A DNA stretch of 64,000 bases. Origin: Vitrella brassicaformis CCMP3155 (taxonomy: Eukaryota; Protista; Chromerida). The DNA lies in NCBI GenBank assembly GCA_001179505.1, contig CDMY01000431.1, forward strand, positions 1 through 64,000. The letters run 5' to 3'. The notes under the pieces are model-generated. The model was given only the letters and a program-made list of their open reading frames with translations. It was not told the origin of the DNA and ran no database searches. How positions within the stretch are numbered: the stretch's first letter is position 1; every line of letters starts with the position of its first letter. The position numbers and the translations under genes are program-made. This document shows positions 4,017 through 47,823 of the stretch, piece after piece.

Positions 4017-4799
4017 TTAGCTCTGCTGCACCTTCTTCGAGATGTCGACAAGAGACTTGAAGGCACTGGTACCGCTGTCGATCGTTAGGCTCTGATACAA
4101 AACAGAAAAAGTCCACAGAGCCCTACATGTGTGTCCTCTTCTCTGACCTGTCTGCGGCCCGTGGGTTGTTCCGTTGCAGAGACGTAAAGGATACCGTCGG
4201 CGTCGATCTCCATCGCCACCTCAAGTTTTTCCCCCTGGATGCCGGTAAAGGCGAATTCGCCCAGCAGATTGTTATCGCTTGCCTTCTCGTGCTCGCCTTC
4301 GTACACCTTGAAGTACATCTGCGAAGATGTGGACACACACAGGGAGATATACAGAGATACGGCGGGCGCTTCGTCGCGAACGTCTCACCTTTGTGGCGCC
4401 TCTCGCATGGAAGACCTTTGATTTCTTGGTCGGGATGGTGCTGTTCCGCTCGATGATGCGTACGACGGTGCCAGAATCGCACGCTGAGTTCAACCTCGCT
4501 TCCATATCGCGTCCATCACGGACTTGTGCATCAAGGCCGAGAGAGAGAGGCGTGACGCTGACGAGGCGGCTCTGTGCAAATGTAAAAAAAAAAGACACAA
4601 GCCTCAGAGGGTTGCACAGATTCGCATCCATGGAATCACATTCGCTTTGAGGGTTGCCTCTCACCAGCCGTGCCAGCTGTGCCTCGAGGGCCCTTATCTT
4701 GCCAGGCATGTCTGTCTTGTTATCGCCCTGCCTCTCAAGAGCGTCCAATCGCCTCTGCATGGCAGCGTGCGCAGCTTGCCATGGTTCTTCCTTCGACAT
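4017..4799 (-). CDS. Small protein: N-terminal coiled coil plus a single HSP70 substrate-binding beta domain (no NBD, no lid)
   Basis: Four phase-0 exons: MSKEEPWQ...ALEAQLARL | SRLVSVTPLSLGLD...VVRIIERNSTIPTKKSKVFHARGATK | MYFKVYEGEHEKASDNNLLGEFAFTGIQGEKLEVAMEIDADGILYVSATEQPTGRRQ | SLTIDSGTSAFKSLVDISKKVQQS*. Confidence 0.78.
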
Positions 4800-4849
4800 G
4801 ATCTGCAGCACACGTACATGCCATGTGCGCAGGTCATGTCAACTCTATT

Positions 4850-5060
4850 GCATACCTTTGTTGAGAGATCCGCTGTCAGTGAGGCTCAAGCGATGCTCGC
4901 GACGCCTTGCCTGCCCTCAAAAGGAACAGATCCGGCTGGCCTTCGGTCGACGAGCTCGCAGCTCGCGTTTTGTGCGTTAGCAACTGGTGGCCTTCTCCAA
5001 TGACATGCAATTGAACGGGTATCATTTGGATCATCAACGTGCAGTGTGTGCTGTAAGGGA
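4850..5060. repeat. Duplicated 5' leader segment, paralogous to about 11895-12140
   Basis: Shared strings such as ttgagagatcc(g/a)ctgtcagtgaggctcaa, ggtcgacgagctcgc and gggt(a/c)tcatttgg(a/c)tcatcaacgtg lie upstream of both HSP70-SBD genes. Confidence 0.8.
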
Positions 5061-5599
5061 TGCTCCTGCACACACTGCACTGAGACCTGGCCCTTCCCCC
5101 TCTCTCTTTTGTGTCGAGTCTTTCACCACCCAGCCATTCACACATTTGTATTTGTGATCGCTTTGCTTGCCGCCGACTCACCTCCCTCCCCTCTCTCCCC
5201 TCCCTCTCTCTGTGTGTGTGTGTGGGTGTGTCGCGTGGGGGAGGGTCAGCGATTTTGAGGCGGCCACTCACTCTTTCTCGCCGCATGGCATCGACAGTCC
5301 ATCGACCACACACGACAAACCGACATAGACAGACAGACAGACAGCCAGTCGTGTGATTGACACTCTCGGGCATTCATGGCCGGGTCGATAGAAAGGGCCG
5401 ACATGTGCGACGATCGTGCGTAAGTCATGATAACTCTAACCTCTTTGGCCATTGGCTGACAGCGAGATAAACGCAAACAATCAATCGCATTCGACGCAAT
5501 CATTGTGTCGACCAGTATGCAATGGGCGCGGCGCACCACCAATCGAGACCACCAAGCTTTCATCGAGACCATCATGCGATCTCATTCAGCGAACACACC

Positions 5600-6110
5600 C
5601 ATCCATCCATCCATGGCCATCCAACAGCACCAACACGTCAATTCATCCAGTCAGCACCATTAAACGCACCTCCTCACCCTGCCGCCATCTCCTACCCCTC
5701 CGGCCGTCTCTGGCTGTTCACATGCAGGCTGGCACGGGTGAGCCATCAATCAAGGCATTCAAGTCGGTGACATCCGACTGGATGAGTGTCATTGGGTGAA
5801 CACATGACAGTGACTCACACCGACAACCACTACCTGTCTGTCCATCTGCTGGCCTGTCTGCCTCCCATCTATCAGTCCGTCCACACACACAGAGGAAGCA
5901 GCGAGTGAGGCAGCGACAGAGATCTAGTCATGCACACATCAAAACCTGCCCGCCTGCCTCCCACATCGATGTGAAATGTCATCCATCAACACGGCAATAT
6001 CAGGCAGGATGATCCACTCGTACACCAAGTCACACACATGAAGGAAAATTCATCACACAGTCAGGCCAGCCGAACATGCCAAAATTGGTGATGCACCTCT
6101 CCCTCCCTCC
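5600..6110. repeat. 3' flank of ankyrin copy A, inverted paralog of about 52200-52620 (3' flank of copy E)
   Basis: For example, tcggtgacatccgactggatg...gtgaacacatga...gactcacaccgac (5760-5825) matches the reverse complement of gtcggtgtgagtc...catgtgttcac...catccagtcgggtgtcaccga (52382-52445). Confidence 0.75.
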
Positions 6111-6115
6111 CTCCA

Positions 6116-9037
6116 TCAGTTGATGCCGAGTGTCACCCACTGCCCCCGTTCGTCGACGTACCCCAGCTGCTGCCACTCGAACGCCGCCACGTCCTCGGTG
6201 AAGCCGTTGTCGATGCTGGCCGGCAGCCCGTCGTATCTCGCGGCCTCGTCCAGGATGGCCCGCTGCACCACCTCACGCAACTCCATCAGCCGGTGCTGCC
6301 CGCTATGCTGCCACCTGACGGCGAAGCACTGCAGCTGCGGCACCCGCACCCTCTCGCCGCCCACATTGGTCGTCCCGCCTACCACCTCCTTATTGCCCAC
6401 CACCTGCAGCGATGCGGCGGCCTCCACGAACCGCGACATCGCGGTGTTGACGCGGCGGCCGACCTCAGTGACGTTCTGGACGGGGCGGGGGCTCTGCTGC
6501 AGCACTGATGGGTTGACGAAGAACGACGCCACGCGCCAGGCGATGGCCGACATGTCCCGGTTGGCGAAGGGCATGTAGTCGTCTTGCCAGGAGGGCTCCG
6601 GGTCGACGTGTGGGGGGAGGGGGGGAGGAGGCACCGAGTTCTGGGATGGGTCGAATGAGGGGAAGGCGGCCTTGAGCTGCTGGGCGGTGGCATTGTGGAG
6701 TGCCTCTGTCAGCGCGTCGGCCATCTCGCGCTGAGGTCGCAAGGCGGCGTTGACGGCCGCCATAATGGCCTGTGGCAGCTGGTTGAGCACTGTCGCGTAC
6801 TCGGGCAGCACCAGCTGACGACAACGGCGGTCCTCCTCTGTGGCTGTGGGCATGAGGGCGATGTCAGCGCCTGCCTGGAGCAGCACACGGATGGTGGTCT
6901 TGATATGGAGGATCCGGATGGTGGCCCGGTCCCTCTCGACATGCCCCGTGGTGTTGTCCTGCAGCTGTTGGGTGTCGACATCGAGCGATATGGCAGCGTA
7001 GGTGAGGGGTGTGACGGTGGGGTCAATCGGCCTCCGTCTGTTGATGTCAGCAGCGGTGAGACGGTGGCAGATAGATGCAGCGACACAGTGGGCGCCACGG
7101 AAGGCCGCGAAGTGCAATGCCGTCACTCCCTCGTTGTCCACGGCCCTGATGTCCGCCCCGTTGGTCAGCAGCAGGTCGATGTAGCTCTCGATGAACTGCT
7201 GGGAATAGACGGGAGGCGTCATGGCCGCACTATGCACCAGGTTGCTGCCACTCGCTCTCCGCTCGGTTGCGAGTGTGCTGTCCCGCTCGATGAGCTGTCG
7301 GTAGAAGGACAGCAGGGTGCGCTCGTGAGCCTCAGTCGGCTGGTCCGTCAGCAATGTGGACGGCAGCGCCAGCACGTACCGCCCCTGTAGCTGAATACCT
7401 GGAAGAGACATACAGACATCATGGTGTGTGTTCCGTGTCGTAAGTGCTGTGAATGGGTGTGCACCTGGCTGGCCCATCAGGAGGTCGACCGCGGCCCGGT
7501 TGCACGAGGCAATGGCCACTCGGATGGGCGTAGACAAACGCCTACCGTCATTGATGTCGGCGCCTCCCTGGATGAGGCTTCGCATGACGGCGAGCTGGAG
7601 TCCGGGCGTCCGCCACGTGGGCAAAGCGACGGGGCAGTCGTCATCGCCGTCCTCATCGCCGTCGTCGGCTGCCCAGATTGACGGCACGCTGTCTTCCGTG
7701 AGGTTGTCAATCGCCAAAGACAGCAGCGGATAAGCGAAGCAGTCGCCCGTGGTGCCCGCCACCCGCAGCCGTGGCATCACATTGGGGTCGGCTCCATTCG
7801 GCTGAATCAGGTCCGTCACCTGCTGTGCGTCAGTGATGGTGCGGCGGATGATGGCCTTGGACAGCCGTCTGCTGGCGTCGCTGGTGCAACGAGGGAAGCG
7901 GACGTCGACGCCCTTCTCCGAGCTCTTCCAGCCGTGGGGTAGCGACGGACCTGGTGGCACAGCGTCAATATGAGAGGGTGGTATATGTGTGTGTTGGTGG
8001 GTGATTCGTTCACCTACCTCCGTCCTGTCGGCCATGTCCGCTGCCCGGCTGCCCATCGGATCCGTCACCACCGACACCAGCACCGACAGCACGATCCCCA
8101 CCAGCACTGACGCCCCCTTCGAGGCGGGGCGGTTGCGGTGGGCGATGCGCATGGCCGCTCAGCGTCGGAACAGTGGATGGCACGCCAACAACAGCAGCAG
8201 CAGGATGGAGGGGAGCGGGGGGACGCTGCACACACCATACACAACACAACACAACACAATTCACAAGACAGCCATTCCATCATCGTGCTGTGGTGCTGCC
8301 TGAGGGGCAGAGGAGGCATGCAATCACCTGTGGCGGTTGGGCACTGGGCAGCTTGCCGGCAGATTGGTGCGTCTGGCTGTCTCCCTTGGCCCTCTTGTGC
8401 TCCTGATGCTCCAGAGGGGAGCCGACACGCTTCACAACACCTACACCTTCACACACATACACACACGACCCAGACCATGATGACGTGCTGCGTCAGGCTG
8501 GCTGTGGTGCCTTCATTGACTACCTGTATAGCTGGATGACGATTCATGCTCCCCTGCTGCTGCTGCTAGTGCTGCTGCTTGTGGCCCATCCGCCACCCTT
8601 GCCGTGACATGAATGGCCTGCCGTGTGCCGCGGCGGAACAGCCGATGACACACACACGCACGGGAGAGTGGGTGAAGGTGTGTGTCTGTCTGTCTGTCTG
8701 TCTGTCTGTCGCGGTGCTCTTGTTTGTTGCCGTACCGGCGATGGCATCTGAGAGGGCTCTGTTGTGGAGGCGTTGTTCCTCTGCCTCATGACGACATCGC
8801 TCACCGCACCGCCGCCCGCACGGCCCTCCTGGCCCTCCTCCACATCCATTGGCTGCCGCTCGTCACCGCCGCCACGTTGGCCTGCAGATCTAGGAACGCA
8901 CAGACACACACGATGTTTGCCGATAATGCTGTGTGTGATGTGCTGCATCTGTCTGAGTTGAGTGTACCTTCATCGCCATCGCCACCGTCCGCCGGGCCAG
9001 CAGCGGCCATGTCGGTGTCGGGACGACCAGATGACAT
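6116..9037 (-). CDS. Ankyrin-repeat protein, family copy A (low-complexity N-terminal exons, ankyrin core, unknown conserved C-terminal domain)
   Basis: ORF 6116-8152 has ankyrin-like GADPN, GADIN, NLVHSAA, NGADIRAVDNEGVTALHFAAFRG and TPLTYAA. Upstream exons splice in phase from MSSGRPDTDM (ATG 9037) through GQRGGGDERQPMD, GVGVVKRVGSPLEHQE and RPPAPLH...GRQDG|GPSLPHGW. Confidence 0.85.
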
Positions 9038-10353
9038 CGCTCTCACAGACCAACAGCTGCACCATGGAACAAAACAGAGATGGGCCTGCAGGGACCTGAT
9101 GCATTTGGTGTGCGCATCAATCAGTGCTTGCCTATCAAACGTATGAGCCGACTGCCAGCTGCACACACACGCTCACTGAACCAACCAGTCCGCCCGTCGA
9201 CAAGGCAGACCTGAAGACCACCAACACACGCAGACAGCAAACAGATCATCCATCCTAGTGTGCTTGTGAGTGATCCAACTGCCGCATCTTGCCACTCACC
9301 GCTGGACAAGAAGCCGCTACGTGGCGATAGTGATGGTCCGTCACACAGCTGCAGCAGCTCTCAATGCTGGCGAGGCTCAATCAATGGCAGAATCGGCACA
9401 CGAGAAGCGGCTGAGCGATGGACAAGCAAACTCGTCTGCAGGGCCTCACTGTGCCTCCGCTGGCTCGCCAAGAGGCCCTGGGAAGCACGAATTGTTTCGC
9501 TTCTGGACCACTCTCTCAGGCTCGCATCGATCCCCTTGCAGGTCGACAAAGGAGGGGGAAGGAGCCCTCCTGGTGGCTCACAGGGCTCGTCAGAAGTCAC
9601 TCATTCAGCCGCAGTGAGCCCCAATCACTTTAGATGAGTTCCTCTGATGGGATGAGCAGCTCACTTGTGCGTCTGTCTGTGTGTGCCTAAGCGATGTCTG
9701 TGTCTGCACTGAGTGAATGAATAAAAAAGGCTTACTACGTCACACGCATGAGAAACAAAACAGCACGCAGCACACAACAGCAGCGTCGTGTGACACAGTC
9801 ACCATCCCGCCGTCGGCCGCTCTTCGGGCTCACTGTGGCAGACGACAGGCACACACCCAACAACCATGGCATGTCATTCTCGCTCAACAGAGCAGCCCAC
9901 ACACACACGATGGCCACACACACGATGGCATCGCTTTCTCGCGATCGATCTCTACAGCTGCCTGCCCGGGAACACAAACACACACATGGCTCTCCCTGTC
10001 CCCGCCCCGCCCCTCCCCTCCCCGCTCACACAGTCTCAAGGGCTTGCCTGACAATCCCCTCACCGCCCCAGTCGCCCCATGGTCGAAACTCGATGCCCTC
10101 AATCATCATTCTACTCTACATGCGCTCATAAAATCACCGTCTCAAAATGCCGCACGGAACGTGCCGCACACACGCGCCCATTCGACATGCACAGAGATCA
10201 ACGTGCAAGACGTAGGCCACAGCGAGATTGACAGAACAAGAAGGGCAGACTGCAACCATGCAGATATGCAATCGTATAAAGCTCGCGGCACACACATACA
10301 CTCACCGACGGCTGGCTGGCCATCGGGACAGTAGCGAGTAGAGCTCGAGAGCA

Positions 10354-11719
10354 TTAGCGGTGGCTCTTCTTTCTGATGTCGACAACGGACTTGAGCGCAC
10401 TGGCGCTGTTCTCAAACGAAAGACTCTGACACATACAAATGAAACACAACATACACAGCCTCACGCACGTGCCTCTTGTTGTACCTGTTGGCGGCCAGTG
10501 GATTCTTCCGTTGCGGTGACGCACCCGATACCGTCGGCGTCGATATCGAATGTCACCTCGATGCCTGCGCCTTCGGGGGCGGGGGTGAGGCCGGTGAACG
10601 TGAACTGTCCCAGCAGATGGTTGTCTTTGGCCATAGGATTCTCGCCCTCGTACACCTTGAAGCTCATCTGCAACATGCACACATACGGAGATGGTATGGG
10701 TGTCACACCGTCGCGAGCATCTCACCTCTGTCTGATTGTCGTAAGTAGTCCAGAAGAAGTCTGATTTCTTGATGGGAATGTTGCTGTTGCGGTCGATGAT
10801 GCGCAGGAACGCGTCTTTGACCTTGCCTTTCTTCCCCCAAATGCCGAGGGACAGAGGGGTCACAACGGGGAGGCCCTGCAGACAGACACACAACAACACA
10901 CTCTATGGCCAACGTCCACACGGGTACACCTATGTCTCTACGACTGGCTAAGACTCACTCACACACTCACAAGCCCTATGGATTGGCGCACCTGCTGTCT
11001 GACACCATCAGGCGGCTTGACCGCACTGGCACTGTTCTTAATCATGAGGGTCTGACACACACACACACACACACACACACAGAGCCTCACACACGTGCGC
11101 CCTTTGATACCTGCGGCACACAGCCCTCCCTGCCTCCCGTGTGGCCACTTTCCGACCTGTTTGCGTCCATTGGATTTGTCTGTCGTGGAGACGCGGAGGA
11201 TACCGTCGACGTCGATATCGAATGTCAGGTCGATCTTGCCTTCGCCTTTGGGGGCGGGGGCGATGCCAGTAAAGGTGAAGCTGCCGAGCAGATGATTGTC
11301 TTTGGCCATAGGGTTCTCGCCCTCGTACACCTTGAAGCTCACCTGCGACATGCACACACACTCATTAAGGTGGGTGTCTATTTGCGCGCGTGCGCATGAT
11401 TCGGTCACGTCTGTCTGGTTGTTGTCAGCTGTAATCCGCTCGATTGACTTTCTGATGGGGATGATGGTGTCCCTGTCAACGATGCGGCAGAAGCTGCCGT
11501 CCGGACTGGCAATGCCGAGAGAGAGGCGTCACGTTGACAAGACCCTGCAAAGGGACACAGAACAACACACGTGCAAGAGTGTGTGTCCACGGTCTTATCG
11601 CTCCAGCTGGTCACCGTCGCTTTGAGGGTCTCGATGGTCGCGTCCCTCTCTGCCAGCTGCGCCTCGAGAGCCTCAGCTCTGGCACGCAAGTCCGGCGTGT
11701 CGCCGCCCGTTCCGCCCAT
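10354..11719 (-). CDS. Coiled coil plus two tandem HSP70 substrate-binding beta domains (no NBD, no lid)
   Basis: [33 protein letters not shown] | [17 protein letters not shown]...NQTD | [52 protein letters not shown]... | [20 protein letters not shown] | [13 protein letters not shown]...DNQTE | [22 protein letters not shown]...[10 protein letters not shown]... | [23 protein letters not shown]. The junctions checked are phase 0. Confidence 0.8.
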
Positions 11720-12321
11720 GGCTGCACCGGGCACACGACAGGGTGCATTCTTCCTCTCAGGGCCTGTGTGCGTACCTTCGTTGAAGGACTTGTGTGTGAT
11801 GCTTCAGCTGGTCAGAGGGATGGCAGATGGCGGCAGATCTGTCGGGAGAAACAAAAGAGGAATACACGACGGATGGGCAGTGGGGGAGGAATGCATTTCG
11901 GTGTACCTTTATTGAGAGATCCACTGTCAGTGAGGCTCAAAGTGATGCTGCTGACGCTTTGCTTGCCTTCAGAAGCCCAACAGAATCACTCTCCCTTTCG
12001 GTCGACGAGCTCGCGGCTTCTTCGGGGAGGGTGGGCTGAATTCATGGCTTTTGTGTTCGTGTTTGCTTGCAGCTGTGGCCCTGCGGCTGCTCCAACGACA
12101 TGCACTTGAACGGGTCTCATTTGGCTCATCAACGTGGAGATGTCACTGCACACATACACGTCTGTCAGTCACTCAGCTGGCTATCGACACCCTTCCCACA
12201 CGCAGTCAGTCAGTCAGTCAGTCAGTCAGCAGAGAGGCAGTGGGTCCCTCTATGCTGCCTACGGCTACCTACGGAGGGGCACTCGAGAGAGAGGCGGCCC
12301 GCCCCGCAGTGTGTCAGTCTC

Positions 12322-12903
12322 TCAGTCGGAGTGCGACACGAATGGCCGCATCCATTGGGCCACTTCTTCCATCGACCCGGCAAACACGACCTCTGTCTGG
12401 CACTGCTCGCACAAATAGCCCTCCGGCCGCAGCGGCAGCGGCTCCTTTGCCTCCTTGATGCGTTCCTTGTTGTCCTTCTGGCGACGGGCGTTGTCGGCCT
12501 TGAGGCGGGGGAGGCTGTGGTGCCAGGCATCCTTGCGTTGGGCGTAGCACTTGTTGCAGATGTGCATGTGTCTGCAGGGGACGTACATGACGGAGGCAGG
12601 GCCGTGCTCGCCGAAACAGATGATGCACCCGCCGGCCTGAATGGTGCCAGCACCATCACGACCACTGCCGGGCTGTGTTGGCTCGGGTGGCGGAGGGGCG
12701 CTCGAGCTGCTGGATGAAGACGGCTGGTGCTGCTGGATGCTCATCTCGGCAAGCCTGTGTGTGTGCATCAATCGCATTATGCACGTGTGTCTGTTACGGA
12801 TGTGTGTGGGCCCGCGTACCTTCGTTCGGTCTCTGCGAGCCGCCTGGCCAGTTCATCGTTCTTCCGCTGGAGCTCAGCCTCTCGTGACGACACTCCCACA
12901 CTG

Positions 12904-12945
<42 letters not shown>

Positions 12946-15900
12946 CATAAAGACATGGCAAGGCATTCCAATCGGATCCGTACCATCCGTACGTCAACGC
13001 CCGTGTGTGTGGCACCCACCTAAGCTCTACACCACCAGCACCACCACCAGCAGCAGCAGCCGAGGCGCCCTGGTCGCCCTCATGATCATGCGATGGCCTG
13101 ACCACACACACATAAAGCCGATGAAGTGACGAGCCGCCCATCGTCGCTTTGTGTGTCGGTGGGCCTGCCTACCCTAGTGGCCCTTGGTATGGTATTGCTG
13201 CTGCTGCTGCTGCCACAGCTGGTGGTGGTGCAGCAGCACTGGAATCGTCGTAGCTACTGGACGACGGACAGGCGTCAAAGGTGGACCTGACACACCACAT
13301 AACAAACATATGGCAGTTCAATGGTGGCTGTGCTGCGATGGTTGACAGCTCTTGTGTGCTACCTTGGCCCGTAGAATGGCGACGGACGGTGCTCATTCTG
13401 ACTCAACGACGCCCCAAGTGGCCTGAGAAAATGCATGCAGAACATCCACCCACCGGTGTGTGCGTGAGGTGTCCTGATGTCGGCCTGTCTGTGCCTTACT
13501 TGGGGCACTTGACGAGTGGCGGAGGGCCCCGGTGACACGACGGACGATGACCACTCGACGACGGCGGACACACAGCCCTGGACACTGCATCCTTCAGAGG
13601 GCCCAGCGGCCCTGCTGCTGCGGATGCGCCTATGGCATGGCCACCAGACGAGAGCGACGAAGAGGGCTGCATGGATGGCGGGGGCATCATCATGGCGGCG
13701 GTCCTGGCCTCGTGGAGTGATGCAAGGATGGCCATCTGGGTCTGCGCATCATGGTCCTCGTCATTCTCACTGCACACAAACAATATGACACCTCGGTGCT
13801 CTGGGTAGTGAGTGTCGTTTGCCGCTCCGAATGACCGCGGTGAGGCAGATCCAGATGCGGCACCTGACGAGTGAGATGAGGGCCTGCAAACCAACAAGGG
13901 AGAGAATGTGATCACATCCACTGGCCAACGGAGACTCACCTGTGTCGGTTCGGCCGACGACTGCCCTTGTTGTCGGCGTCATCAGCAGCTGCCGCAGCCG
14001 ACGGCAGCCTGCATGACAGCCAGGAGAAGTAAGCAAGTCTGTGGTGGGCCTCGCTGTGCCGACCTCTGCAGTGTGTCTATGTCTTCGCCGTCGGCACCAG
14101 TTTCCTCTACGTCGCTACCAGCGTCATGCTCAACACCCTCCTCAGCCACCGACTCAACACGCCTACAAGAGCCCCCAACGACACGATAAGATCCATGCAC
14201 CATAAGCGGCCCCCCACCGATGTGTGCGTGAGGGGTCCTCATGTCGGCCTCTCTGTGCCTTACTTGGGGCACTTGACGAGTGGCGGAGGGCCCCGGTGAC
14301 ACGACGGACGATCCACACTCGACGAGGAGGGAAGCACACTGACACGAAATGAGACAACGAAACACATCAACACCATTCATTGTGCCCAGCCATCGATCCC
14401 CTTCTCTGTGTCTGTCTGCTTACGGCTGTTGTGACCCATGTGCCAGAGGGGGGAATGACTCATCGGCACCGCTCGCCGGTCTGTGTGCAGGTGGCAGGGG
14501 CCGAGGGGGTGGGGGCGGGTGAGAGGGACTCGACGACACAAACGGTCGCCGCTTGGCCGACTCGCGCGGCTCCACAGCCGACGGCAGCGGGGTAGTGGAA
14601 GGGGCCGCCCGAGACGACAACGACAGGCATGGTGCAGCAGCCGGGAGGCCCAGCCCCCTCCCTATGCCCAACTTGCTGCTTGCCGATGGACCCGGCAGGC
14701 GCTTCTCCCGCGGCGTCTGGTCGGCCGTCGACACACAGCTGGGGCGAGAGAGCAGAAGACGATCAGCCGAGGGCTGCTCTGTCGTCTTGTGCTTGGGTGT
14801 GGGGGGATGGAAGGGCGAGAAGGGGGAACGAGTCGACGCTTTGGTGTGGGCAGCTCTCTGGGTCCTGATGGGGGCCGTCTTCTGCTGTTTGTGGTGGGTT
14901 GTCTGCTTCTGCCTTTCGATGGCGCGGCTGGCGAAGGTCGACCCCACCAGCAGGGCGTCGCCGTCCTCATCTTGATCATCGGCTGCCCCACTGCTGTCTG
15001 CCTGGTCGTCTTCGCCGCCCGGCGGGCAGCTGGTGGAGGTGGAGGTGGCTGTTGCGCTCGCCTGCCTCTTGCCCCCCCGCTTGCCCTTCTTCTTGCCACC
15101 CGTCTTCTCCTTAGCCGCCGCCCTCTCCTTGTTGGCCGCCTCCTCCTCTTTGATGAGGGCCGCCATCTTCGCGTCGGCCTCCCTCTGCTGCCACGCCAAT
15201 TCGGCCTCTGTGGGCACCTCCTTGGCGTGTCGTGTGGCCTGCCGCCTCTTGTGCCTGTCGCGGTGCTCCTTCAGTTTCTGCAGCCGCTCCTGCGCCTCGA
15301 TGATGGCGGGGCGCGGCTCGCGAATGGGCAGCTGCTTGGGCAGCGCCGTGCGCTCCGCCAACACCAGCTGGCGGCAACGACGCTGATGCTCTGTAGCAGT
15401 GGGCATGAGGGCGATGTCAGCGCCCGACTGGAGCAGCACACGGATGGTGGTCTTGAGGTTGGAGATCCGGATGGTGGCCCGGTCCCTCTCGGCCTGCTCC
15501 GTGTTGTCGTCCTGCAGCTGTTGGATGTCGTCATCGAGCTCTGTGGCAGCGGTGGCGAGGGGTGTGAGAGTGGGGTCATTCGGCAGGCCTCTGTTGACGT
15601 CAGCAGCGGTGAGGCGGCGACAGAGAGAGGCAGCCAAACGGTGGGAGCCGCCGATGGCCGCGCAGTGTAATGGCGTCCGTCCGAAGGTGTCCACGGCCGT
15701 GATGTCGGCCCCGTTGGCCACCATCAAGTCGATGTAGCTCTCGATGAACTGCTGAGACCAGACGGGAGGTCTCACGGCCGCCACATGGACCAGATTGATG
15801 CCACCCGGGTCCCGCTCGGTTGCGAGTGTGGGGTCTCGCTGGATGAGCTGCCGGTAGAAGGACAGCAGGATGGCCTCGCTGTCCTCAGTCGGCTGATCCG

Positions 15901-16975
15901 TCGGCAGTGTGGGCGGCAGCAGCATCACCAAGCGCCCCCGCAGCTGAATGCCTGGAACAGACAGACAGACAGACAGACGTCCATCATGGTGTGTGTTCCT
16001 TGTCGTGAGTGCTGTGAATGGGTGTGTACCTGGCTGGCCCATCAGGAGCTCGAATGCGGCCCGGTTGCACGAGGCGATGGCCACTCGGATGGGCGTATGA
16101 TGACCCGCCCCATTGATGTCGGCGCCGTTGTCGATCAGGACCTGGATGACGGCGAGCTGAAGGCCGGGTGTCTCCCACATGGGCATGGCGACGGGAGTGC
16201 AACCACCATTGACGTCGTATGCCCAGATGGACGGCACGCTGTTGTCCGTGAGGTTGTCAATGCACAGCGACAGCAGGGAATAGGCTAAATAGGCACCCGT
16301 GGTGCCCGCCACCCGCAGCAGTGGCTCCACATTGGGGTCGGCTCCATTCGGCTGAATCAGGTCCGTCACCTGCTGTGCGTCAGTGACGGTGCGGCGGAGG
16401 ATGCACTTGGACACCATCAAGCTGGCGTCACTGGTGCCAGGAGGGACGGTGACGCCATTCCCACAGCTCCTCCAGCCAGGTGATCGCGGCACACCTGTGG
16501 TTGGCACAACGGGCAGATTATTAACGATGAGCTCTGGAAAGGCGATTCTGATTTGTGTAGCGGTGGGTCTGTCGGTCGGCGTCTACCTCTGTTCAGTCGA
16601 GTCCGGCCTTGTCCGCTGCGCTGCTGCCCGCCAGCACCCCCACCGACGCCGACACCGAGACCCCCACCAACACGGCTAACACCTGCACAAGCACACACAC
16701 ACGAGCAGTCATAACCGTGCTGCTTGCTATATCTCACAGCTCGTCGCTCACCCTCGTCAATGCCATCATTGCGATTGTCTTTGTTCTCTATGTGCCGGCC
16801 GGCACCGGTGGTCTCCTCCTCGGCTACATCGTCTGCAAAGGAACACACACATTGACACACACGATGCTGTGAGTGATGTGGTGCATCTGTCTGAGCTGAG
16901 TGTACCTTCATCGCCATCGCCACCGTCGGCCGGGCCAGCAGCGGCCATGTCGGTGTCGGGACGACCAGACGACAT
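12322..16975 (-). CDS. Ankyrin family copy B: ankyrin repeats, coiled coil/Lys-rich segment, UIM-like motif, C-terminal RING-HC (putative E3 ligase)
   Basis: Ankyrin ORF 14420-16507 ends at a CAG CC|GTAAGC donor. Later exons: VLPSSSSVDRPSCHRGPPPLVKCPK, RVESVAEEGVEHDAG, EDHDAQTQMAILASLHE, RPLGASLSQNE, SREAELQRKNDELARR, and the final exon CIICFGEHGPASVMYVPCRHMHICNKC...CEQC. Confidence 0.75.
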
Positions 16976-17579
16976 CGCTCTCACTCACTCAGACAGACAG
17001 ACAGACAGCTGCACCAGGGACCACACACACAGAGATGGGCCTGCAGGCATCTGATGCATTTGTTGTGTGCATCAGTGCTAGCCGACAGCCAGCCACAGAC
17101 GCTCACTCAATCAACCAGTCCGCCCGTCGACAAGGCAGACCTGAAGACCACAAACACACACACGGACAGCAAACAGAATGAGCCAATCGTCGCATCTTCC
17201 CACTCACCGTCGCAACACCGTCGGACGAGAAGCCGCTACCTGGCGCGATGATCTCTTGGGCAGCAGGGCTGTGCACACTCGATAAGATGGAAAGGCCGCT
17301 AATTCCGCTGATGGATAGGTGGGCACACGAGAAGCCGCTGCAGCGATGGGCAGACGGACTCGTCCGCTGAGCAGGGCCTCACTGTGCCTCCACTGACGCA
17401 CCAAGAGGGCTCGCAAGAGGGCCTATAGGAAGCGATTCGTGTCTGTTTCTTCTGCCTCTCTCTCAGGCTCGCACCGATCGGCTCGCGAGTTTTCTTCACA
17501 GGAGGGGGAGCCCTTCTGATGGGCTCACAGGGTTCGTCAGGAGTCAAGCATTCGGCCGCAGTGAGCCCCAATCACTTTG

Positions 17580-18140
17580 GATGAATTGCTCTTGATGAAT
17601 GAGCAGCTCACTTGGCTCCCGGAGTGTGTGTGCTGTCTGTCTGTGTCCTGATTCTGTCTGTCACACTGTCACGACCATTGCAGTAGTGAACGATACAGAG
17701 TAGTCATCACTTTACACGCGGTACATGTATTCATCAGCCATTCCGTCCATCAGAAAAGCCTGTAAGCACCAGTTACGCCACACATCACCAGACACTGTCA
17801 TGGATGGCAGGCAGTCGGGAGCGGCACACATCGCAATGACACTACGCCAGCAGACGGGGGGCGAGGAAAAACCCATTTGGCTGTCTGTGTGTCTGTCTGT
17901 CTGTCTCACCCTTCTGTCTGCTTGACAGTTGAGGACACCCTTCATCGATCTCTCTGTCCGCAATGGTGACCTACACTCTCTGGATAGCATCGATCTCATG
18001 GGATGGAAGAGCCACTCAGTCAAAAAGCTGTCTCTCTCCCTCCCCCAGTCCGCTACACACTCTCCTGTCCTCTCCCGCCCTCTCCCACATCGATGTCTGT
18101 TGGCAGGCTGGTAGGGACGTCATGTGATGGGCTGATCGGC
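17580..18140. repeat. Intergenic block between copies C and B, inverted paralog of about 48380-48990 (between D and E)
   Basis: For example, gacagttgaggacaccc...atcgatctc...gtccgca.tggtgacctacact...tggatagcatcg.tctcatgg.atggaagagccactcagtcaaaaagctgtctctctccctc appears as the reverse complement at 48490-48620. Homology continues on both sides. Confidence 0.88.
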
Positions 18141-18348: not shown

Positions 18349-21300
18349 TCAATTGTCCGTCTGCACATGCGCTGTGATGGTCTTCTCGGCGACACTGCGG
18401 CACGCAGGGCATTGCAGCACAGAGTGGCACTTGACGTCATCGGGCACCGGCTTGCCCGCCCCCTCCGGCCGCGCCTTCTCTGCCTTGGCACTCTCGTGTC
18501 TGCCCTTCCACTGCTGCCAGCATTCGGCACACAGGCACAGGTGGCGACACGGATCAAACAGCACTGTGGGCGAGTTGTGGTTGCAGATGACGCAGATGGG
18601 ACGAGGCGGGAGAGGCGGTGCTGCAGCAGCCGATGCGGCCGCCGCTTCCCTGTCCTCCAGCCGACCCTCCATCTTGTTGGCCTCCTTGCCGAGTGCCCGC
18701 AGTGCCACCTTGGCCTTCGCGATGTCGCGCTTGAAGGCCTCCACATCTTCAGGTGACCGCAGGGATGACAGCCGGTACTCCGTCAGGCTGCATACACCCA
18801 ACAAGACGACGACGGCACCAACAAGGGTGCATGGGCGCCTGAAATCGTTTGCGCGTGTGTGTACCATGTGCGAGCTATCTGCAGCAGGCGGTCGTGCTCT
18901 TGCTGGAGTGTTGGTATGGTGGTCGCCTCGGCTGCCGCAGTCGCCTCCGTCACTGTCGAGATGTCCGCCTCCAGCCTGCAGGGCAGCGAAGGGGCAGCAT
19001 CCATCAACAGACTCCATCACTCGTTTGTACGTGTGTGTGCTTACTGCCGCAGCTTGGCCTTGGTGCTCTCCAGCATCTCACGAAGCTGCCCTTCCGATGA
19101 CAGCGAGTCGATCTCGTCGGCTATCTCGTCAGCTATCTCGTCAACACGCGAAGACCTGAATAAGTGTCGATCAATCGCTTGTGTGGGCATGCACGTGTGT
19201 GTGTGTGTGTGTGTGTTGTCGTTACTCACCTTTGAATGCGATCATCGTTGCAGGCTACATAAAATGGCGCAGATGGGGACGGCAGACGGGCAAACAGGGA
19301 CCCGCTGCCGTTGCCGGCACGTGTGTGGCTATCGCTGGTGCGGGAGGTCTCACACGCACTGCTGTAGAGTTGGTCGAGCCGCTCGTCTTCGCGCGTGACC
19401 CTCTCGCCGAACTCACACACCTCCGCTGCCGTGGTCAGGGCCATCAGCGCATCGCGAGTCAACCTGAAGGACCACATGAATCGATTAACGAAGATGATTC
19501 AAAGCGATGCATTTGTATGTATCTTTGTACGTGTCTGTTTGCTCTTGTGTGGCTTCTGTGAGTGCCCCTATGGCCGCGTTGAGCTCATTGGTCCGCTCCA
19601 TGATGCTCGAGTGCCGCTCCAGCGCCTCCCCATAGCGTCGCTCCATGCTGCAGACAAATGGAGTGAACGCACACATGACGCAGCCAACCCTCCGCCCATC
19701 CATCCATCCATCCATCCCTTGCTGACCTCTGTTGATCCTGCATAGCCTTGCACACTGCATCCCTCAGAGAGCCGAGCGATGCTGCTGCTGCCGCCGCCGA
19801 TGCGCCACTGGCGTAGCCAACAGACCAAAGTGACGAAGAGGGCGGCATGGGTGGCGGGGGCATCATGGTGGCGGTGGTGGCGTCGTGCAGCGATGCAGCG
19901 ATGGCCATCTGTGTCTGCGCATCATGCTCCTCCTCGTCCTCACTGCACACCCAACTAATGACACTTGTGCCGTGGTGCAGATGCCTGTCTAGGGCATGTA
20001 ACGGACCTGTCGTCTCCATCTTGGTGTGGTGGATGGTGCTTGTCGGCTGCCGGTATGAGAGCCGGCCCAGCTCCGACCGATGCGGCCACCGCGCTACTGA
20101 CCGAAGACGAGTGCAACACCGCCCGCACGCCACTGCCGGCCGGCCCAGCCGTGCCGCTGCCGTCGCGCTGCAGAGGCTTGGTGAGAGGCCGGAGAGGCTC
20201 AGCACCGGAGGAACGAGAAGAGGGCCGCGTGGTGTCCGCAGACTCGGACATTGGCCTGTAAATCAGGAGAGGATGCCGTCGGTATAAGTGAGGGTTGACA
20301 GCGGGGCGTTAGTGTGAATGCGTGAGCTTCGCTGTGTTGACCTCTCCTGCTGTGTGTCTGTGTCTTCGCCGTCAGCACCAGTTTCCTCTACGTCGCTACC
20401 AGCGTCATGCTCAACACCCTCCTCAGCCACCGACTCAACACGCCTACAAGAGCCCCCAACGACACGATAAGATCCATGCACCATGACCCTCCACCGATGT
20501 GTGTGCGTCAGGGGTCCTCATGTCGGCCTGTCTGTTCCTTTACTTGGGACACCTGACGAGTGGCGGAGGGCCCCGGTGACACGACGGACGATACCCACTC
20601 GACGACGGCGGTAACAGGTCGTCACTGACACAAAATGAGACAACGAAACACGCCATTCATTGTGCCCATCCATCTATCCCCTTCTCTGTGTCTGTCTGCT
20701 TACAGCTGCTGTGGCGCATACGCCAGAGGGGGGAATGACTCATCGGCACCGCTCGCCGGTCTGTGTGCAGGTGGCAGGGGCCGAGAGGGTGGGGGCGGGT
20801 GAGAGGGACTCGACGACACAAACGGTCGCCGCATGGCCGACTTGTGCAGCTCCTCAGCTGACGGCAGACGAAGAGGGGAAGGGACCGGCCGAGCCGACAG
20901 GGATGGTGCAGCAGCCGGGAGGCCCAGCCCGCTGTCTCTGCCCAACTTGCTGCCTGCCGATGGGCCCGGCAGGCGCTCCTCGCGAGGCGTCTGGTCGGCC
21001 GTCGACACACCGCTGGGGTGAGAGAGCAGCAGACGATCAGCCGAGGGCTGCTCAGTCGTCTTGTGCTTGGCTGTCGGGGGCTGGAAGGGCGAGAAGGGGG
21101 AACGAGTCGACTCTTTGGGATGGGCAGCTCTCTGGGTCTTGTTGGTGGCCTTCTTCTGCTTGGCGTTCGTGGCCTGCGCATGGCTTTCGATGGCGTGGCT
21201 GCCGAAGGCCGACCCCAAAAGTAGGGCGTCGCCGTCCTCATCTTGATCATCGGCTGCCCCACTGGTGTCCGCCTGATCGTCTTCGTCGCCCGGCGGGCTG

Positions 21301-23291
21301 CTCGTGGAGGTGGGGGCCGCTGTTGCGGACGCCTGCCTCTTGCCCCCCTTCTTGCCCTTCTTCTTGCCCGCCTTCGCCTTAGCCGCTGCCCTCTCCTTGT
21401 TGGCCTCCTCCTCTTTGATGAGTGCCGCCATCCTGGCGTCGGCCTCCCTCTGCTGCCGCGCCAACTCGGCCTCTGTTGGGGCCTCCTTGGCCTGTCGTGT
21501 GGCCTGCCGCCCCTTGCGCCTGTCGCGGTGCTCCTTCATCTTCTGCAGCCGCTCCTGCGCTTCGACGGTGGAGGGGCGCGGCTCGCGAATGGGCAGCTGC
21601 TTGGGCAGCGCCATGAGCTCCGCCAACACCAGCTTGCGGCAATGGCGGTCCTCCTCTGTGGCAGTGGGCATGAGGGCGATATCAGCACCCGCCTGGAGGA
21701 GCACACGGATGGTGGTCCTGACGTGGGGGATCCGGATGGTGAGCCGATCCTTCGCTGCCTGCCCCGTGTTGTTGTCACGCAGCCGCTGGGTGAACTCATC
21801 GAGCTGTCGGGCAGCGTAGGTGAGGACTGTGTTGGTGGGCTCATTTGGCTGCCCTCTGTTGATGTCGGCAGCAGTGAGACGGCGGCAGAAAGACGCGGCG
21901 ACACGATGGGAGCCCCAGAAAGCCGCGTGGTGCAGCGGCGTCCGTTCCTCAGAGTCCACGGCCGTGATGTCGGCCCCGTTGGCCACCAGCAGGTCGATGT
22001 AGTCCTCGATGAACTGCTGAGACCAGACTGGAGGGCTCGAGGCCGCGTCATGCAGCAGGTTGCTGCCACTGTCGGCATCGGTCTCAGTTGCGAGTGTGGG
22101 GTCTCGCTGGATGAGCTGCCGGTAGAAGGACAGCAGGATGCGCTCGTGAGCCTCAGTCGGCTGGTCCGTCGGCAATGGGAGCGGCAGCTGCATCACAAGG
22201 AGCCCCGGCAGGTGGAGCCCTGCAATAGACAGACAGACAGACAGACAGAGAGAGAGAGAGAGAGAAGGCGTCCACCATGGTGTGTTTCGTGTGTCGTGAG
22301 TGCTGTGAATGGGTGCGCACCTGGCTGGCTCATCAGGAGGTCGAAGGCGGCCCGGTTACACGAGGCGATGGCCACCACGATGGGCCTATGGTCACCCTCA
22401 CCCCCATTGATGTCGGCGCCTCCCTGGATCAGGCTTCGCATGACGGCGAGCTGGAGTCCGGGTGTCTGCCACATCGGCATGGCGACGGGACAGTCGCCCT
22501 CGCCGCCGGCTGCCCAGATGGACGGCACGCTGTTGTGAGTGAGGTTGTTGATGCACAGCGCCAGCAGCGGATAGGCCAGGTAGTCATCCGTAGTGCCTTC
22601 CACCCGCAGCTGTGGCTCCACATTGGGGTCGGCCCCCTGCTGGTGGATCAGGTCCGGCACATGCTCTTCGTCAGTGACGGTGCGGCGGAGGATGTGCCGA
22701 CACAGCCGAATGCTGGCGTCGGCGGTGTCAATAGGGAAGGCGAGGTCGATGCCGTTCTCCAAGCTCTTCCAGCCAAGTCGTAACGGCGGACCTGCGGCTG
22801 GCACAGACAATCCGGCAAAAGACACACATACAAGATTATTCACGATGAGCTCTGGAAAGGCGATTCTGCTTTGTGTAGCGGTGTCCCTGTGTCGATCGGC
22901 GGTTTCATCTGTTCGGTCGAGTCCGGCCCTGTCCGCTGCGCTGCTGCCCGCCAGCACCCTCACCGACGTCGACACCGAGACCCCCACCAACACGGCTAAC
23001 ACCTGCACACACACAACGACAGAGCAGTCATGACCGTGCTGCTTACTATATCCCACAGCTCGTCGCTCACCCTCGTCAATGCCACCATTGCGATTGCCTT
23101 TGTTCTCTATCTGCCGGCCACCACCGGTGGTCTCCTCCTCGGCTACATCGTCTGCAGAGGAACACACACATCCACACACACGATGCTGTGAGTGATGTGC
23201 TGCATCTGTCCGAGCTGAGTGTACCTTCATCGCCATCGTCACCGTCGGCCATACCAGAGGCCATGTCGGTGTCGGGACGACCAGACGACAT
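18349..23291 (-). CDS. Ankyrin family copy C: ankyrin repeats, coiled coil, UIM-like motif, helical exons, RING-HC (frame continuity of the 3' exons uncertain)
   Basis: ORFs 22193-23242 and 20700-22196 carry the ankyrin core, and 20700 ends at a CT|GTAAGC donor. Downstream: VESVAEEGVEHDAG, EDEEEHDAQTQMAIAASLHD, VDEIADEIADEIDSLSSEGQLREMLESTKAKLRQ, and CVICNHNSPTVLFDPCRHLCLCAEC...CPAC. Confidence 0.7.
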
Positions 23292-34139: not shown

Positions 34140-37032
<2,893 letters not shown>

Positions 37033-47400: not shown

Positions 47401-47786
47401 GGTAGCGCACACGCTCAATCAACACACGCGGCACAGCCGCCATCGAATTGCCACGTCTGTTCTGTGGTGTGTCAGATCCGGGTTTCACGCCTGTACGTCC
47501 TCCAGTAGCTACGACCACTCCAGTGCACCACCAGCTCCAGCAGCAGCTGCATTTGCAACACCATCAGCACCATACGAAGAGCCACTAGGGTAGGCAGGCA
47601 CACCCACACACCGGCGATGGGCTGCTCGTCACGTTATTGGCTTGCGACGCCGCGTGTGCTACCAGGTCATCGCACCACCATGAGGGCGGACAGGGCGTCT
47701 CGGTGTCGGTACACCATGGTGCTGCTGCTCCTGCTAATGCTCTAAATGATAGGTGGGTGTCGATTGGTTGTCTCACTATCAGTGTC

Positions 47787-47823
<37 letters not shown>

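What the first reader, a model, noticed from the sequence alone, without database searches (positions are those of the whole stretch)
4017..17600. Repeated two-gene cassette: ankyrin(-RING) gene followed by an NBD-less HSP70-SBD gene
Seen: on the minus strand copy B (ends 12322) is followed within about 600 bp by the double-SBD gene, and copy A (ends 6116) within about 1.3 kb by the single-SBD gene. The two SBD genes share a paralogous leader. Inference: a co-duplicated module in which a variable ankyrin recognition/E3 protein is paired with a truncated chaperone that could hold or present clients, reminiscent of sensor-helper or decoy pairs. This is the best candidate for an undescribed system here, though simple tandem duplication of neighbours could explain it.
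Basis: inference. Interest (0 to 1): 0.75.

Follow-up and report, generated by a model that had tools for sequence, protein, structure and literature searches.

The report
Duplicated ankyrin plus motorless-Hsp70 gene pair
In the alga Vitrella brassicaformis, a stretch holding an ankyrin-repeat gene followed by a small gene for only the peptide-gripping part of an Hsp70 chaperone occurs twice in tandem; the small genes are real and unusual, but only shared duplication history, not function, links them to the ankyrin genes.

Summary
The window is from Vitrella brassicaformis CCMP3155 (contig C431). On the minus strand it runs ankB-RING (16975..12322), SBD gene D (12139..10354), ankA (9037..6116), SBD gene S (5044..4017). 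Four collinear DNA blocks show that the two units are duplicates.

Corrections:
- The "double-SBD" gene lacks 2 nt in a CT run at 11518/11519, so its first SBD is broken. The annotated protein has about 1.5 SBDs.
- Only ankB carries a RING.

The SBD genes form a three-member, Vitrella-only family (third copy at C305:511k, also between ankyrin genes). Each encodes a coiled coil, the Hsp70 beta-sandwich and one helix, with no ATPase and no lid. Both introns sit where those of the mitochondrial-type Hsp70 gene sit. dN/dS is 0.4-0.6, and two members have spliced transcripts.

The ankyrin genes belong to a private family of at least 67 annotated genes. Nearly all lack an SBD neighbour, and none is fused to an SBD. 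Ankyrin copies are about three times less diverged at silent sites than the SBD copies, and the SBD-adjacent ankyrin genes are not one clade. Other ATPase-less SBD genes (C395, C299) lie away from ankyrin genes.

Verdict: real duplicated neighbours inside an ankyrin array; a functional pair is not shown.

The scan had already described the C305 member (s1-221718).

The parts
4017..4799 (-). SBD gene S, coding part: coiled-coil exon 4799-4665, SBD exon a 4571-4389, SBD exon b 4318-4148, tail exon 4091-4017 (stop 4019-4017). The annotated protein P0001 (174 aa) starts at the second ATG.
   Evidence: All four exons have AG/GT borders. P0001 matches this model. The AF2 model gives helix 3-32, a beta sandwich 43-154 and helix 161-173; the top Foldseek hits are DnaK/mortalin SBDs at E~1e-11.
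4853..5044 (-). Conserved upstream block of gene S, ending at a GT donor. Probably a non-coding 5' exon (inference).
   Evidence: 69% identical to 11904-12139. Stops in the frames read, and a donor 'AAAG|GTA' in both copies.
6116..9037 (-). ankA gene (annotated P0160, 801 aa): 5' exons at 9037-8966, 8882-8736 and 8617-8522, and a main exon ending at 6116. It has ankyrin repeats plus the family's C-terminal domain of unknown fold, and no RING.
   Evidence: The C-terminal domain model has pLDDT 64 and no fold match (best Z 4.1).
5562..5962 (-). 3' flank of the ankyrin unit, shared with other family copies.
   Evidence: 78% identical to 52251-52642, and about 81% to C305:507804-508043 and C305:512248-512463.
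10354..11719 (-). SBD gene D, coding part: coiled-coil exon 11719-11615; first SBD unit (a 11544-11409 with the frame break, b 11342-11157, tail 11051-10992); second SBD unit (a 10875-10726, b 10667-10485, tail 10425-10354).
   Evidence: Annotated P0151 (255 aa) and the transcript-derived ORF P0002 (216 aa).
11518..11519 (-). Frame break in the first SBD of gene D: a CT run 2 nt shorter than in gene S puts 'VTPLS' and 'LGIAS' in different frames.
   Evidence: Sequence read; the two exon frames overlap by 2 nt. Exon D1_a also has dN/dS of 0.8-1.0 against S and D2.
11904..12139 (-). Conserved upstream block of gene D, paralogous to 4853-5044. It starts about 180 bp after the ankB stop.
12322..16975 (-). 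ankB-RING gene: first exon about 16975-16904, long ankyrin/coiled-coil ORF 16507-14420, further small exons, and a RING exon ORF 12777-12322.
   Evidence: Ank_4/Ank_2 hits, and zf-C3HC4_3 at 27.1 bits against a cut-off of 27. P0188 and P0218 are collinear with it. The first exon is identical to residues 1-24 of P0160.
18349..22806 (-). ankC-RING gene, upstream neighbour of ankB. It is followed by ankB, not by an SBD gene.

Best explanation
The region is part of a tandem array of a private, fast-evolving ankyrin gene family of Vitrella brassicaformis. A small family of Hsp70-derived genes is embedded in that array. An ancestral gene arose when the exons for the substrate-binding beta-sandwich of the mitochondrial-type Hsp70 gene were copied at the DNA level, introns included, and joined to a coiled-coil exon. 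That gene lay beside an ankyrin gene and was copied along with array segments, giving S and D here and a third copy on contig C305. Inside D, the three SBD exons were duplicated again, and the first copy has since been broken. The ankyrin units around these genes were later turned over or homogenised with other family members, so the two halves of the 'cassette' now have different ages. The SBD proteins have no ATPase, no lid beyond one helix, and a coiled coil (one member also has a membrane helix). I infer that they most likely act as ATP-independent, oligomeric peptide-binding or holding proteins. The pairing with ankyrin genes is best read as inherited neighbourhood, not as a demonstrated two-gene system. 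Shown: the gene structures, the duplication, the family sizes, the selection, the intron sharing and the transcripts. Inferred: the order of events and the biochemical role.
For: The organism is named by the sources of P0001 and P0151. The third paralogue, C305:511213-511739, has the same exon plan and a homologous coiled coil, and lies between ankyrin genes at 505990-507702 (+) and 512581-514492 (-). Both SBD-gene introns (after 'DNQTx' and after 'TGRxQ', phase 0) coincide with introns of the mitochondrial-type Hsp70 at C531. They do not coincide with those of the cytosolic-type C708 gene, the BiP-like C278 and C431:34k genes, or the C266 and C220 genes. The best solved-structure sequence match of P0001 is mortalin. 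SBD dN/dS is 0.39-0.61, with bootstrap upper bounds below 1 except for D1-D2. Reading frames and splice sites are intact at about 33% nucleotide divergence, where a neutral sequence stays stop-free in about 3-15% of simulations. Spliced transcript-derived ORFs exist: P0006 (MMETSP, complete) and P0002. No protein outside Vitrella is closer than ordinary Hsp70s among 1.84 billion representatives, and a metagenome scan found only canonical Hsp70 SBDs. The ankyrin family has at least 67 annotated members, all from Vitrella, none with PF00012, and 345 first-look candidates in the genome. All four SBD-adjacent ankyrin genes fall in one subclade of 20-21 members, but each has nearer kin without an SBD neighbour. 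Ankyrin dS is 0.24-0.36 against SBD dS of 0.48-0.94.
Against: All three members of the coiled-coil-SBD family lie within 0.2-3 kb of an ankyrin gene of one subclade, on two contigs. Adjacency has outlasted much sequence divergence, which selection for linkage would also explain. The dS contrast could be inflated by codon bias in the GC-rich ankyrin ORFs, and non-coding blocks differ less (76-81% against 67-69%). The ankyrin subclade tree is star-like, so ankA+ankB as sisters is not rejected (AU p=0.08). Expression of gene S itself is not shown. No biochemical data exist for any member.
Confidence: 0.6

Rival explanations
1. Functional two-gene module. A variable ankyrin recognition protein, sometimes with a RING E3 domain, works with its neighbouring ATPase-less SBD protein, which holds or presents clients, as CHIP works with Hsp70 or as sensor-helper pairs do. 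Linkage is kept by selection.
For: 3 of 3 coiled-coil-SBD genes sit beside ankyrin genes of one subclade, at two loci. In this window they share a strand, with gaps of 0.2-1.3 kb. The SBD genes are under purifying selection while the ankyrin genes evolve fast (dN/dS 0.7-0.87 by NG86). The cleft-forming exon a is the most variable part of the SBD.
Against: At least 63 of 67 annotated family members have no SBD neighbour, and there are no fusions. A RING lies next to one SBD gene only. At C305 the arrangement differs: one ankyrin gene is convergent, and the co-oriented one is about 2.9 kb away across an assembly gap and a possible opposite-strand ORF. The ankyrin and SBD parts have different divergence, and there is no co-phylogeny. 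The two loci are paralogous, so adjacency counts as one event. On a rough estimate that the family's neighbourhoods cover 1-2% of the genome, one of five ATPase-less SBD loci landing there is not remarkable.
Confidence: 0.15
2. The SBD 'genes' are decaying captured fragments of an Hsp70 gene, like the ClpB and histone-deacetylase fragments noted elsewhere in this window, with no function of their own.
For: They arose by partial DNA-level duplication. The first SBD of gene D carries a frameshift, and its exon a has dN/dS of about 0.8-1.0. A clearly degenerate mitochondrial-Hsp70 fragment exists at C320:11.2-12.1k. Earlier first-reader notes record gene fragments in repeats at 54-57k of this window.
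Against: S, D2 and the C305 copy keep open frames and all splice sites at dS of 0.6-0.9. dN/dS is significantly below 1. Complete spliced transcripts exist. The AF2 model of P0001 is confident over the sandwich.
Confidence: 0.1
3. The order of events is reversed. A tandem pair of SBD genes came first, and ankyrin units were inserted or copied between them later by array expansion or ectopic conversion, so there was never a co-duplicated cassette.
For: SBD dS (0.74 for S-D2) is about three times ankyrin dS (0.24 for A-B). The ankyrin unit has sharp shared borders (3' flank 5562-5962, upstream block to about 10079) that recur at other family copies. The subclade is star-like, as after a burst.
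Against: Gene conversion among ankyrin copies would give the same pattern after a true co-duplication. The block order is perfectly collinear.
Confidence: 0.25

Closest known systems
Canonical Hsp70 substrate-binding domain (DnaK / mitochondrial mortalin type)
   Same: Same beta-sandwich fold and sequence family: PF00012 positions about 381-515, Foldseek E~1e-11, 31-36% identity. The hydrophobic core motifs are kept, and two intron positions are shared with Vitrella's own mitochondrial-type Hsp70 gene.
   Different: There is no nucleotide-binding domain. Of the lid only one short helix remains. A coiled coil (plus a membrane helix in the C305 member) sits where the ATPase would be. The cleft loops L1,2 and L3,4 are rebuilt, including a 16-residue insert in S.
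CHIP (STUB1)-Hsp70: an E3 ligase working with a chaperone
   Same: The idea is the same: an E3-type RING/U-box protein next to a client-binding Hsp70 part. ankB has a RING and its neighbour D has SBDs.
   Different: CHIP binds the Hsp70 C-terminal EEVD motif through TPR repeats. Here there are no TPR repeats, no EEVD motif and no ATPase cycle, and only one of the three SBD genes has a RING-bearing neighbour. This is recalled knowledge and was not tested.
Paired sensor-helper or integrated-decoy immune receptor genes (plant NLR pairs)
   Same: A fast-evolving repeat protein is genetically linked to a second gene, in a lineage-specific expanded family.
   Different: Such pairs are typically head-to-head and co-evolve. 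Here the genes are tandem on one strand, there is no co-phylogeny, there is no NB-ARC or other signalling domain, and most family members are unpaired.
Vitrella genes with [Hsp70 SBD + SUMO-like] modules (C395:174-177k, C299:26-28k; earlier finding s1-231049)
   Same: They are also ATPase-less Hsp70 SBD genes in the same genome, which shows that stand-alone SBDs arose more than once here.
   Different: They are a different family, with a BiP-type intron inside 'IEV|TFDID', several SBDs alternating with ubiquitin-like-looking segments (Rad60-SLD below cut-off), and no ankyrin-family gene within about 8 kb.
Plant truncated Hsp70 (Hsp70T; PMC10687569)
   Same: A naturally shortened Hsp70 paralogue.
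   Different: According to that paper's abstract, Hsp70T lacks only a conserved C-terminal motif. I did not read its body. The Vitrella proteins lack the whole ATPase and the lid.

Membership tests
Hsp70 (PF00012) | N-terminal actin-like nucleotide-binding (ATPase) domain | tested here: not met
   Pfam matches of P0001, P0151 and P0152 cover only profile positions about 381-515. There is no NBD hit within the loci in the six-frame scan. The N-termini are coiled coil.
Hsp70 (PF00012) | Substrate-binding beta-sandwich (SBD-beta) | tested here: met
   Pfam E-values are 3e-31 to 3e-50. The AF2 sandwich has pLDDT above 90 over residues 70-150, and the top Foldseek hits are DnaK, mortalin, Hsc70 and BiP SBDs.
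Hsp70 (PF00012) | Alpha-helical lid (helices A-E) and C-terminal tail motif | tested here: not met
   The proteins end 20-25 residues after strand 8, with one predicted helix at 161-173.
Ankyrin-repeat proteins (PF12796/PF13637) | Ankyrin repeats above the Pfam cut-off | tested here: met
   Ank_4 scores 36.7 and 39.4 bits (cut-off 22.7) and Ank_2 scores 33.2 and 36.8 bits (cut-off 27.3) in ankA and ankB.
RING E3 ligases (zf-C3HC4_3, PF13920) | RING finger present in the ankyrin partner of each SBD gene | tested here: not met
   The ankB exon scores 27.1 bits against a cut-off of 27, and ankC scores 36.5 bits. ankA has none, and P0167 (the C305 506k ankyrin gene, identified) has no PF13920 in its precomputed Pfam list. 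Ligase activity was not tested.
Conserved two-gene functional module (sensor-helper type pair) | Adjacency recurs in independent lineages or family-wide | tested here: not met
   Only 4 of at least 67 family genes flank an SBD gene. The two loci are paralogous. No relatives outside Vitrella were found to compare.
Conserved two-gene functional module (sensor-helper type pair) | Partners share one duplication history (co-phylogeny, equal divergence) | tested here: not met
   dS is 0.24-0.36 for the ankyrin genes against 0.48-0.94 for the SBD genes. The AU test rejects ankA+ankB+C305_506k as one clade (p=0.005); ankA+ankB alone is not rejected (p=0.08).
Conserved two-gene functional module (sensor-helper type pair) | Co-expression or physical interaction of the partners | not testable with these tools

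The most novel reading that the evidence does not exclude
The coiled-coil-SBD proteins are dedicated, ATP-independent client holders for the neighbouring fast-evolving ankyrin (and ankyrin-RING) proteins. They would either present bound peptides to them for ubiquitination or stabilise these rapidly changing proteins. That would make this a new kind of chaperone-derived adaptor paired with a diversifying binder repertoire in an alveolate.
Probability: 0.12. Interest if true: 0.7.

Novelty: new variant of a known kind. Interest (0 to 1): 0.35.

Why it matters
Stand-alone Hsp70 substrate-binding domains encoded as genes of their own are rare. Two full-text literature searches here found no description of them. 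This family is a natural experiment on what the peptide-binding sandwich can do without its ATP motor and lid, when oligomerised by a coiled coil or tethered to a membrane. It also gives a clean example of a new gene made by partial, intron-preserving duplication of a housekeeping chaperone gene. The link to ankyrin genes matters only if it proves functional. At present it mainly shows how a gene embedded in an expanding array is carried along with it.

Tried and rejected
1. BiP origin of the SBDs. I guessed this from the motifs 'DNHLLG' and 'KVYEGE'. Identity to all Vitrella Hsp70 paralogues is similar (about 42-52%), and the intron positions point to the mitochondrial-type gene instead.

2. 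Relatives outside Vitrella. The word search found only the protein itself. The full HMMER search gave only Vitrella proteins above ordinary Hsp70s and mis-joined Hsp70 models. The metagenome scan gave only canonical Hsp70 SBDs, and none of the N-terminal patterns hit.

3. Fusion ('Rosetta stone') evidence. No ankyrin-family protein carries PF00012.

4. Fold of the ankyrin family's C-terminal domain. The model is weak (pLDDT 64) and has no match (best Z 4.1).

The inference rests on P0002 starting exactly at the GTG that opens exon D1_b.

6. Repeats shared between the SBD flanks and the 54-57k gene-fragment repeats of this window. None were found.

7. Literature on natural NBD-less Hsp70 genes or on the Vitrella ankyrin family. 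Nothing relevant turned up.

I used the databases' own annotated proteins (P0001, P0151, P0152) instead. Exons were joined only inside scripts, for dN/dS and for trees.
Full report
**Source**

The genome has 72.7 Mb in 1064 contigs, and the window is contig C431:1-64000. Database proteins encoded here are labelled Vitrella brassicaformis CCMP3155. Genes have short GT-AG introns, so the mechanical ORF lists show only exons.

**What is at 4017-17600**

Reading the minus strand from high to low coordinates:

- **ankB-RING.** The first exon is about 16975-16904. A long ORF at 16507-14420 holds the ankyrin repeats and a charged coiled-coil stretch. The RING exon ORF is 12777-12322. Two annotated RING-bearing paralogues, P0188 and P0218, align collinearly over 16.5k-12.35k, and again over ankC at 22.8k-18.35k. 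The ankyrin and RING parts are therefore one gene.
- **SBD gene D.** It has an upstream conserved block at 12139-11904 and an ATG at 11719. After the coiled-coil exon come two sets of three exons (a, b, tail), and the gene ends at 10354.
- **ankA.** This is annotated as P0160 (801 aa). It has 5' exons from 9037 and a main exon 8152-6116, with no RING.
- **SBD gene S.** It has an upstream block at 5044-4853 and an ATG at 4799. Exons a, b and tail follow, ending at 4017. It is annotated as P0001, 174 aa.

**Is it a repeated cassette?**

Yes, at the DNA level. Four blocks occur in the same order in both units:

| Block | Unit A | Unit B | Identity |
|---|---|---|---|
| Ankyrin upstream / first exon | 8926-9245 | 16864-17177 | 81% |
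| Ankyrin core | 6774-7964 | 15327-16511 | 80% |
| SBD leader block | 4853-5044 | 11904-12139 | 69% |
| SBD exons with introns | 4032-4460 | 10366-10803 | 67% |

The leader block has no other copy in the genome.

**Correction to the 'double SBD'**

Gene S reads 'VTPLSLG' across a CT run. In the first SBD of gene D that run is 2 nt shorter. As a result, the frame entered from the coiled-coil exon ('GLVNVTPLS', ending at 11518) and the frame of the rest of the exon ('LGIAS...', starting at 11519) do not join, and the first frame stops at 11479.

- The annotators avoided the break with a 12-nt mini-exon ('GLVN') spliced straight to exon b. P0151 therefore has half an SBD plus one whole SBD.
- P0002 is a spliced ORF from a 1213-nt transcript contig. 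It starts exactly at the GTG that opens exon D1_b.
- That start is what a gene caller would give if the mRNA keeps the out-of-frame exon.
- Exon D1_a also shows relaxed constraint, with dN/dS of 0.8-1.0 against 0.35-0.5 for exon b.
- Skipping from the coiled-coil exon to exon D2_a would be in phase, and would give an S-like single-SBD protein.

**What the SBD genes are**

- **Fold.** Pfam places all products on Hsp70 profile positions about 381-515 only. The AF2 model of P0001 (mean pLDDT 82) has an N-terminal helix at 3-32 and the eight-stranded sandwich at 43-154. The sandwich has pLDDT above 90 except for a 16-residue insert in loop L1,2. One helix follows at 161-173, which corresponds to the first lid helix. 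The top Foldseek hits are DnaK, mortalin, Hsc70 and BiP SBDs at E~1e-11.
- **Third paralogue.** It lies at C305:511213-511739 and has the same three-exon plan and a homologous coiled coil. Its product is P0152, or the complete MMETSP transcript P0006. This protein has a long coiled coil interrupted by a 28-residue hydrophobic helix.
- **Distribution.** These three genes are the whole family. Only two proteins in 1.84 billion representatives score below 1e-30, and both are from Vitrella. The next hits are ordinary or mis-joined Hsp70s. A metagenome scan matched only through the universal 'FEIDANGI' pattern.
- **Origin.** The two introns inside the SBD lie after 'DNQTx' and after 'TGRxQ', both in phase 0. 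They coincide with introns of the mitochondrial-type Hsp70 gene at C531:318-320.5k. They do not coincide with those of the cytosolic-type C708 gene, the two BiP-like genes (C278 and C431:34.4-36.8k), or the C266 and C220 genes. The best solved-structure sequence match of P0001 is mortalin. The ancestor was therefore a partial, intron-preserving DNA copy of the mitochondrial Hsp70 gene joined to a coiled-coil exon. That join happened before the family diversified.
- **Selection.** Pairwise dN/dS is 0.39-0.61 by NG86 (about 0.17-0.27 by YN00 where it converged). Bootstrap upper limits are below 1 for all pairs except D1-D2. Frames and all splice sites are intact in S, D2 and the C305 copy at about 33% nucleotide divergence. 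In simulation, only 3-15% of neutral sequences stay stop-free at that divergence.

These are genes, not debris, apart from the first SBD of D.

**What the ankyrin genes are**

ankA finds 345 first-look candidates in the genome. It also finds 67 annotated proteins with strong matches, all from Vitrella. Nothing outside Vitrella matches beyond generic ankyrin repeats, and none of the 67 carries PF00012. The family's C-terminal domain gave a weak model and no fold match. Within the subclade studied, dN/dS is high: 0.7-0.87 by NG86 and 0.4-0.6 by YN00. An earlier report of this scan (s1-197196) describes what appears to be the same family as a repertoire of at least 150 genes with a variable binding face and a constant tail. 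I did not verify that it is the same family.

**Is the pairing more than neighbourhood?**

For:
- All three coiled-coil-SBD genes lie next to ankyrin genes.
- All four flanking ankyrin genes fall in one well-supported subclade of 20-21 members.

Against:
- The closest kin of ankA (P0162 and P0163 in the core-region trees, and P0161 over the full length) and of the others have no SBD hit nearby in three genome-wide SBD searches.
- The subclade is star-like. The three co-oriented upstream ankyrin genes are rejected as one clade (AU p=0.005). ankA+ankB alone is not rejected (p=0.08). I had seen a quick tree before running the test, but the group was defined by SBD adjacency.
- Silent divergence is 0.24 for ankA-ankB and 0.24-0.36 for all ankyrin pairs, including pairs between contigs. 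For the SBD genes it is 0.74 for S-D2, 0.48 for D1-D2 and 0.64-0.94 against the C305 copy.
- Alignable non-coding blocks differ in the same direction, though less strongly (76-81% against 67-69%). The ankyrin halves are therefore either younger or homogenised.
- At C305 the layout differs. One ankyrin gene is convergent, about 0.5 kb beyond the SBD stop. The co-oriented one is about 2.9 kb upstream, across an assembly gap and a possible opposite-strand ORF.
- A RING accompanies only gene D.
- Other ATPase-less SBD loci exist without ankyrin-family genes within about 8 kb. C395:174.3-176.8k and its paralogue C299:26.2-27.6k have several SBDs with a BiP-type intron, alternating with sub-threshold Rad60-SLD-like segments. 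C320:11.2-12.1k is a degenerate mitochondrial-Hsp70 fragment.

The C431 and C305 loci are paralogous, so the adjacency is one historical event. Ankyrin-family neighbourhoods cover very roughly 1-2% of the genome (my estimate from 70-150 genes at about 10 kb each). On that estimate, one of five ATPase-less SBD loci landing in such a neighbourhood is not striking.

**Mechanism, with likelihoods**

- **Most likely (0.6).** This is duplication of neighbours inside an expanding ankyrin array, followed by turnover or conversion of the ankyrin units. The SBD proteins work on their own as ATP-independent, coiled-coil-oligomerised peptide binders, one of them tethered to a membrane. The biochemical role is inferred from the domain content alone.
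- **Functional E3/recognition-plus-holder module (0.15).** It is not excluded.
- **SBD genes are junk (0.1).** This is unlikely except for the first SBD of D.
- **Order of events (0.25 for the alternative).** It remains open whether the cassette was copied whole or the ankyrin units came in later. This overlaps with the best explanation.

**Novelty and score**

The Hsp70 sandwich as a free-standing gene product with a coiled coil is a new variant of a very well-known family. This scan had already reported it from the C305 member (s1-221718). The specific claim of this finding, a two-gene system, is not supported beyond shared duplication. Interest is 0.35.

Noticed in passing
window 11518-11519 (-): A CT dinucleotide run is 2 nt shorter than in the paralogous gene S, which breaks the frame of the first SBD of gene D. 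This could be a real mutation or an assembly slip.
   Followed up: partly
L002/L007 (C395:174300-176800) and L003/L008 (C299:26200-28150): A second, unrelated family of ATPase-less Hsp70 SBD genes. Several SBDs with a BiP-type intron alternate with ubiquitin/SUMO-like-looking segments (Rad60-SLD at 18-20 bits, below cut-off). An upstream ORF has a faint ART hit (E=0.08). No ankyrin-family gene lies within about 8 kb. This matches earlier finding s1-231049.
   Followed up: partly
L004 (C320:11200-12100): A degenerate partial copy of the mitochondrial-type Hsp70 gene (SBD and the start of the lid) with many replaced conserved residues. It looks like a decaying example of the kind of partial duplication that gave rise to the SBD genes.
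   Followed up: no
window 34427-36801 (-): A full-length BiP-like Hsp70 gene lies 22 kb from the SBD genes. It has a near-twin with the same exon plan at C278:27136-29809, and contig C278 also carries ankyrin-family genes at 81-85k, which hints at a larger segmental duplication.
   Followed up: no
window 44613-48398 (+) and 49513-52193 (+): Two further members of the same ankyrin subclade (annotated P0181 and P0166) lie on the opposite strand. With ankC (18349-22806) the window holds five family genes, and only two are followed by an SBD gene.
   Followed up: partly
L001 (C305:505993-507249 and about 508600-509100): The ankyrin gene upstream of the C305 SBD gene has an in-frame TGA in its core, which the annotated P0167 avoids. 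A run of N (assembly gap or withheld stretch) lies between it and the SBD gene.
   Followed up: no
window 10483-10686 vs 11155-11361 (-): Exon b of the two SBD units of gene D is 83.7% identical, and the match runs about 20 nt into the intron. This is much closer than the rest of the units (73% overall), which suggests a later conversion or stronger constraint on this exon.
   Followed up: no
window 6119-6700 (-): The roughly 190-residue C-terminal domain shared by most of the ankyrin family has conserved Cys, Trp and Gly positions. It has no Pfam match and no structural match (AF2 pLDDT 64, best Z 4.1).
   Followed up: partly
window 40580-40813 (-): A weak match (E=7e-5, 37% identity) to the N-terminal coiled coil of the C305 SBD protein. 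It is probably coiled-coil composition only.
   Followed up: no
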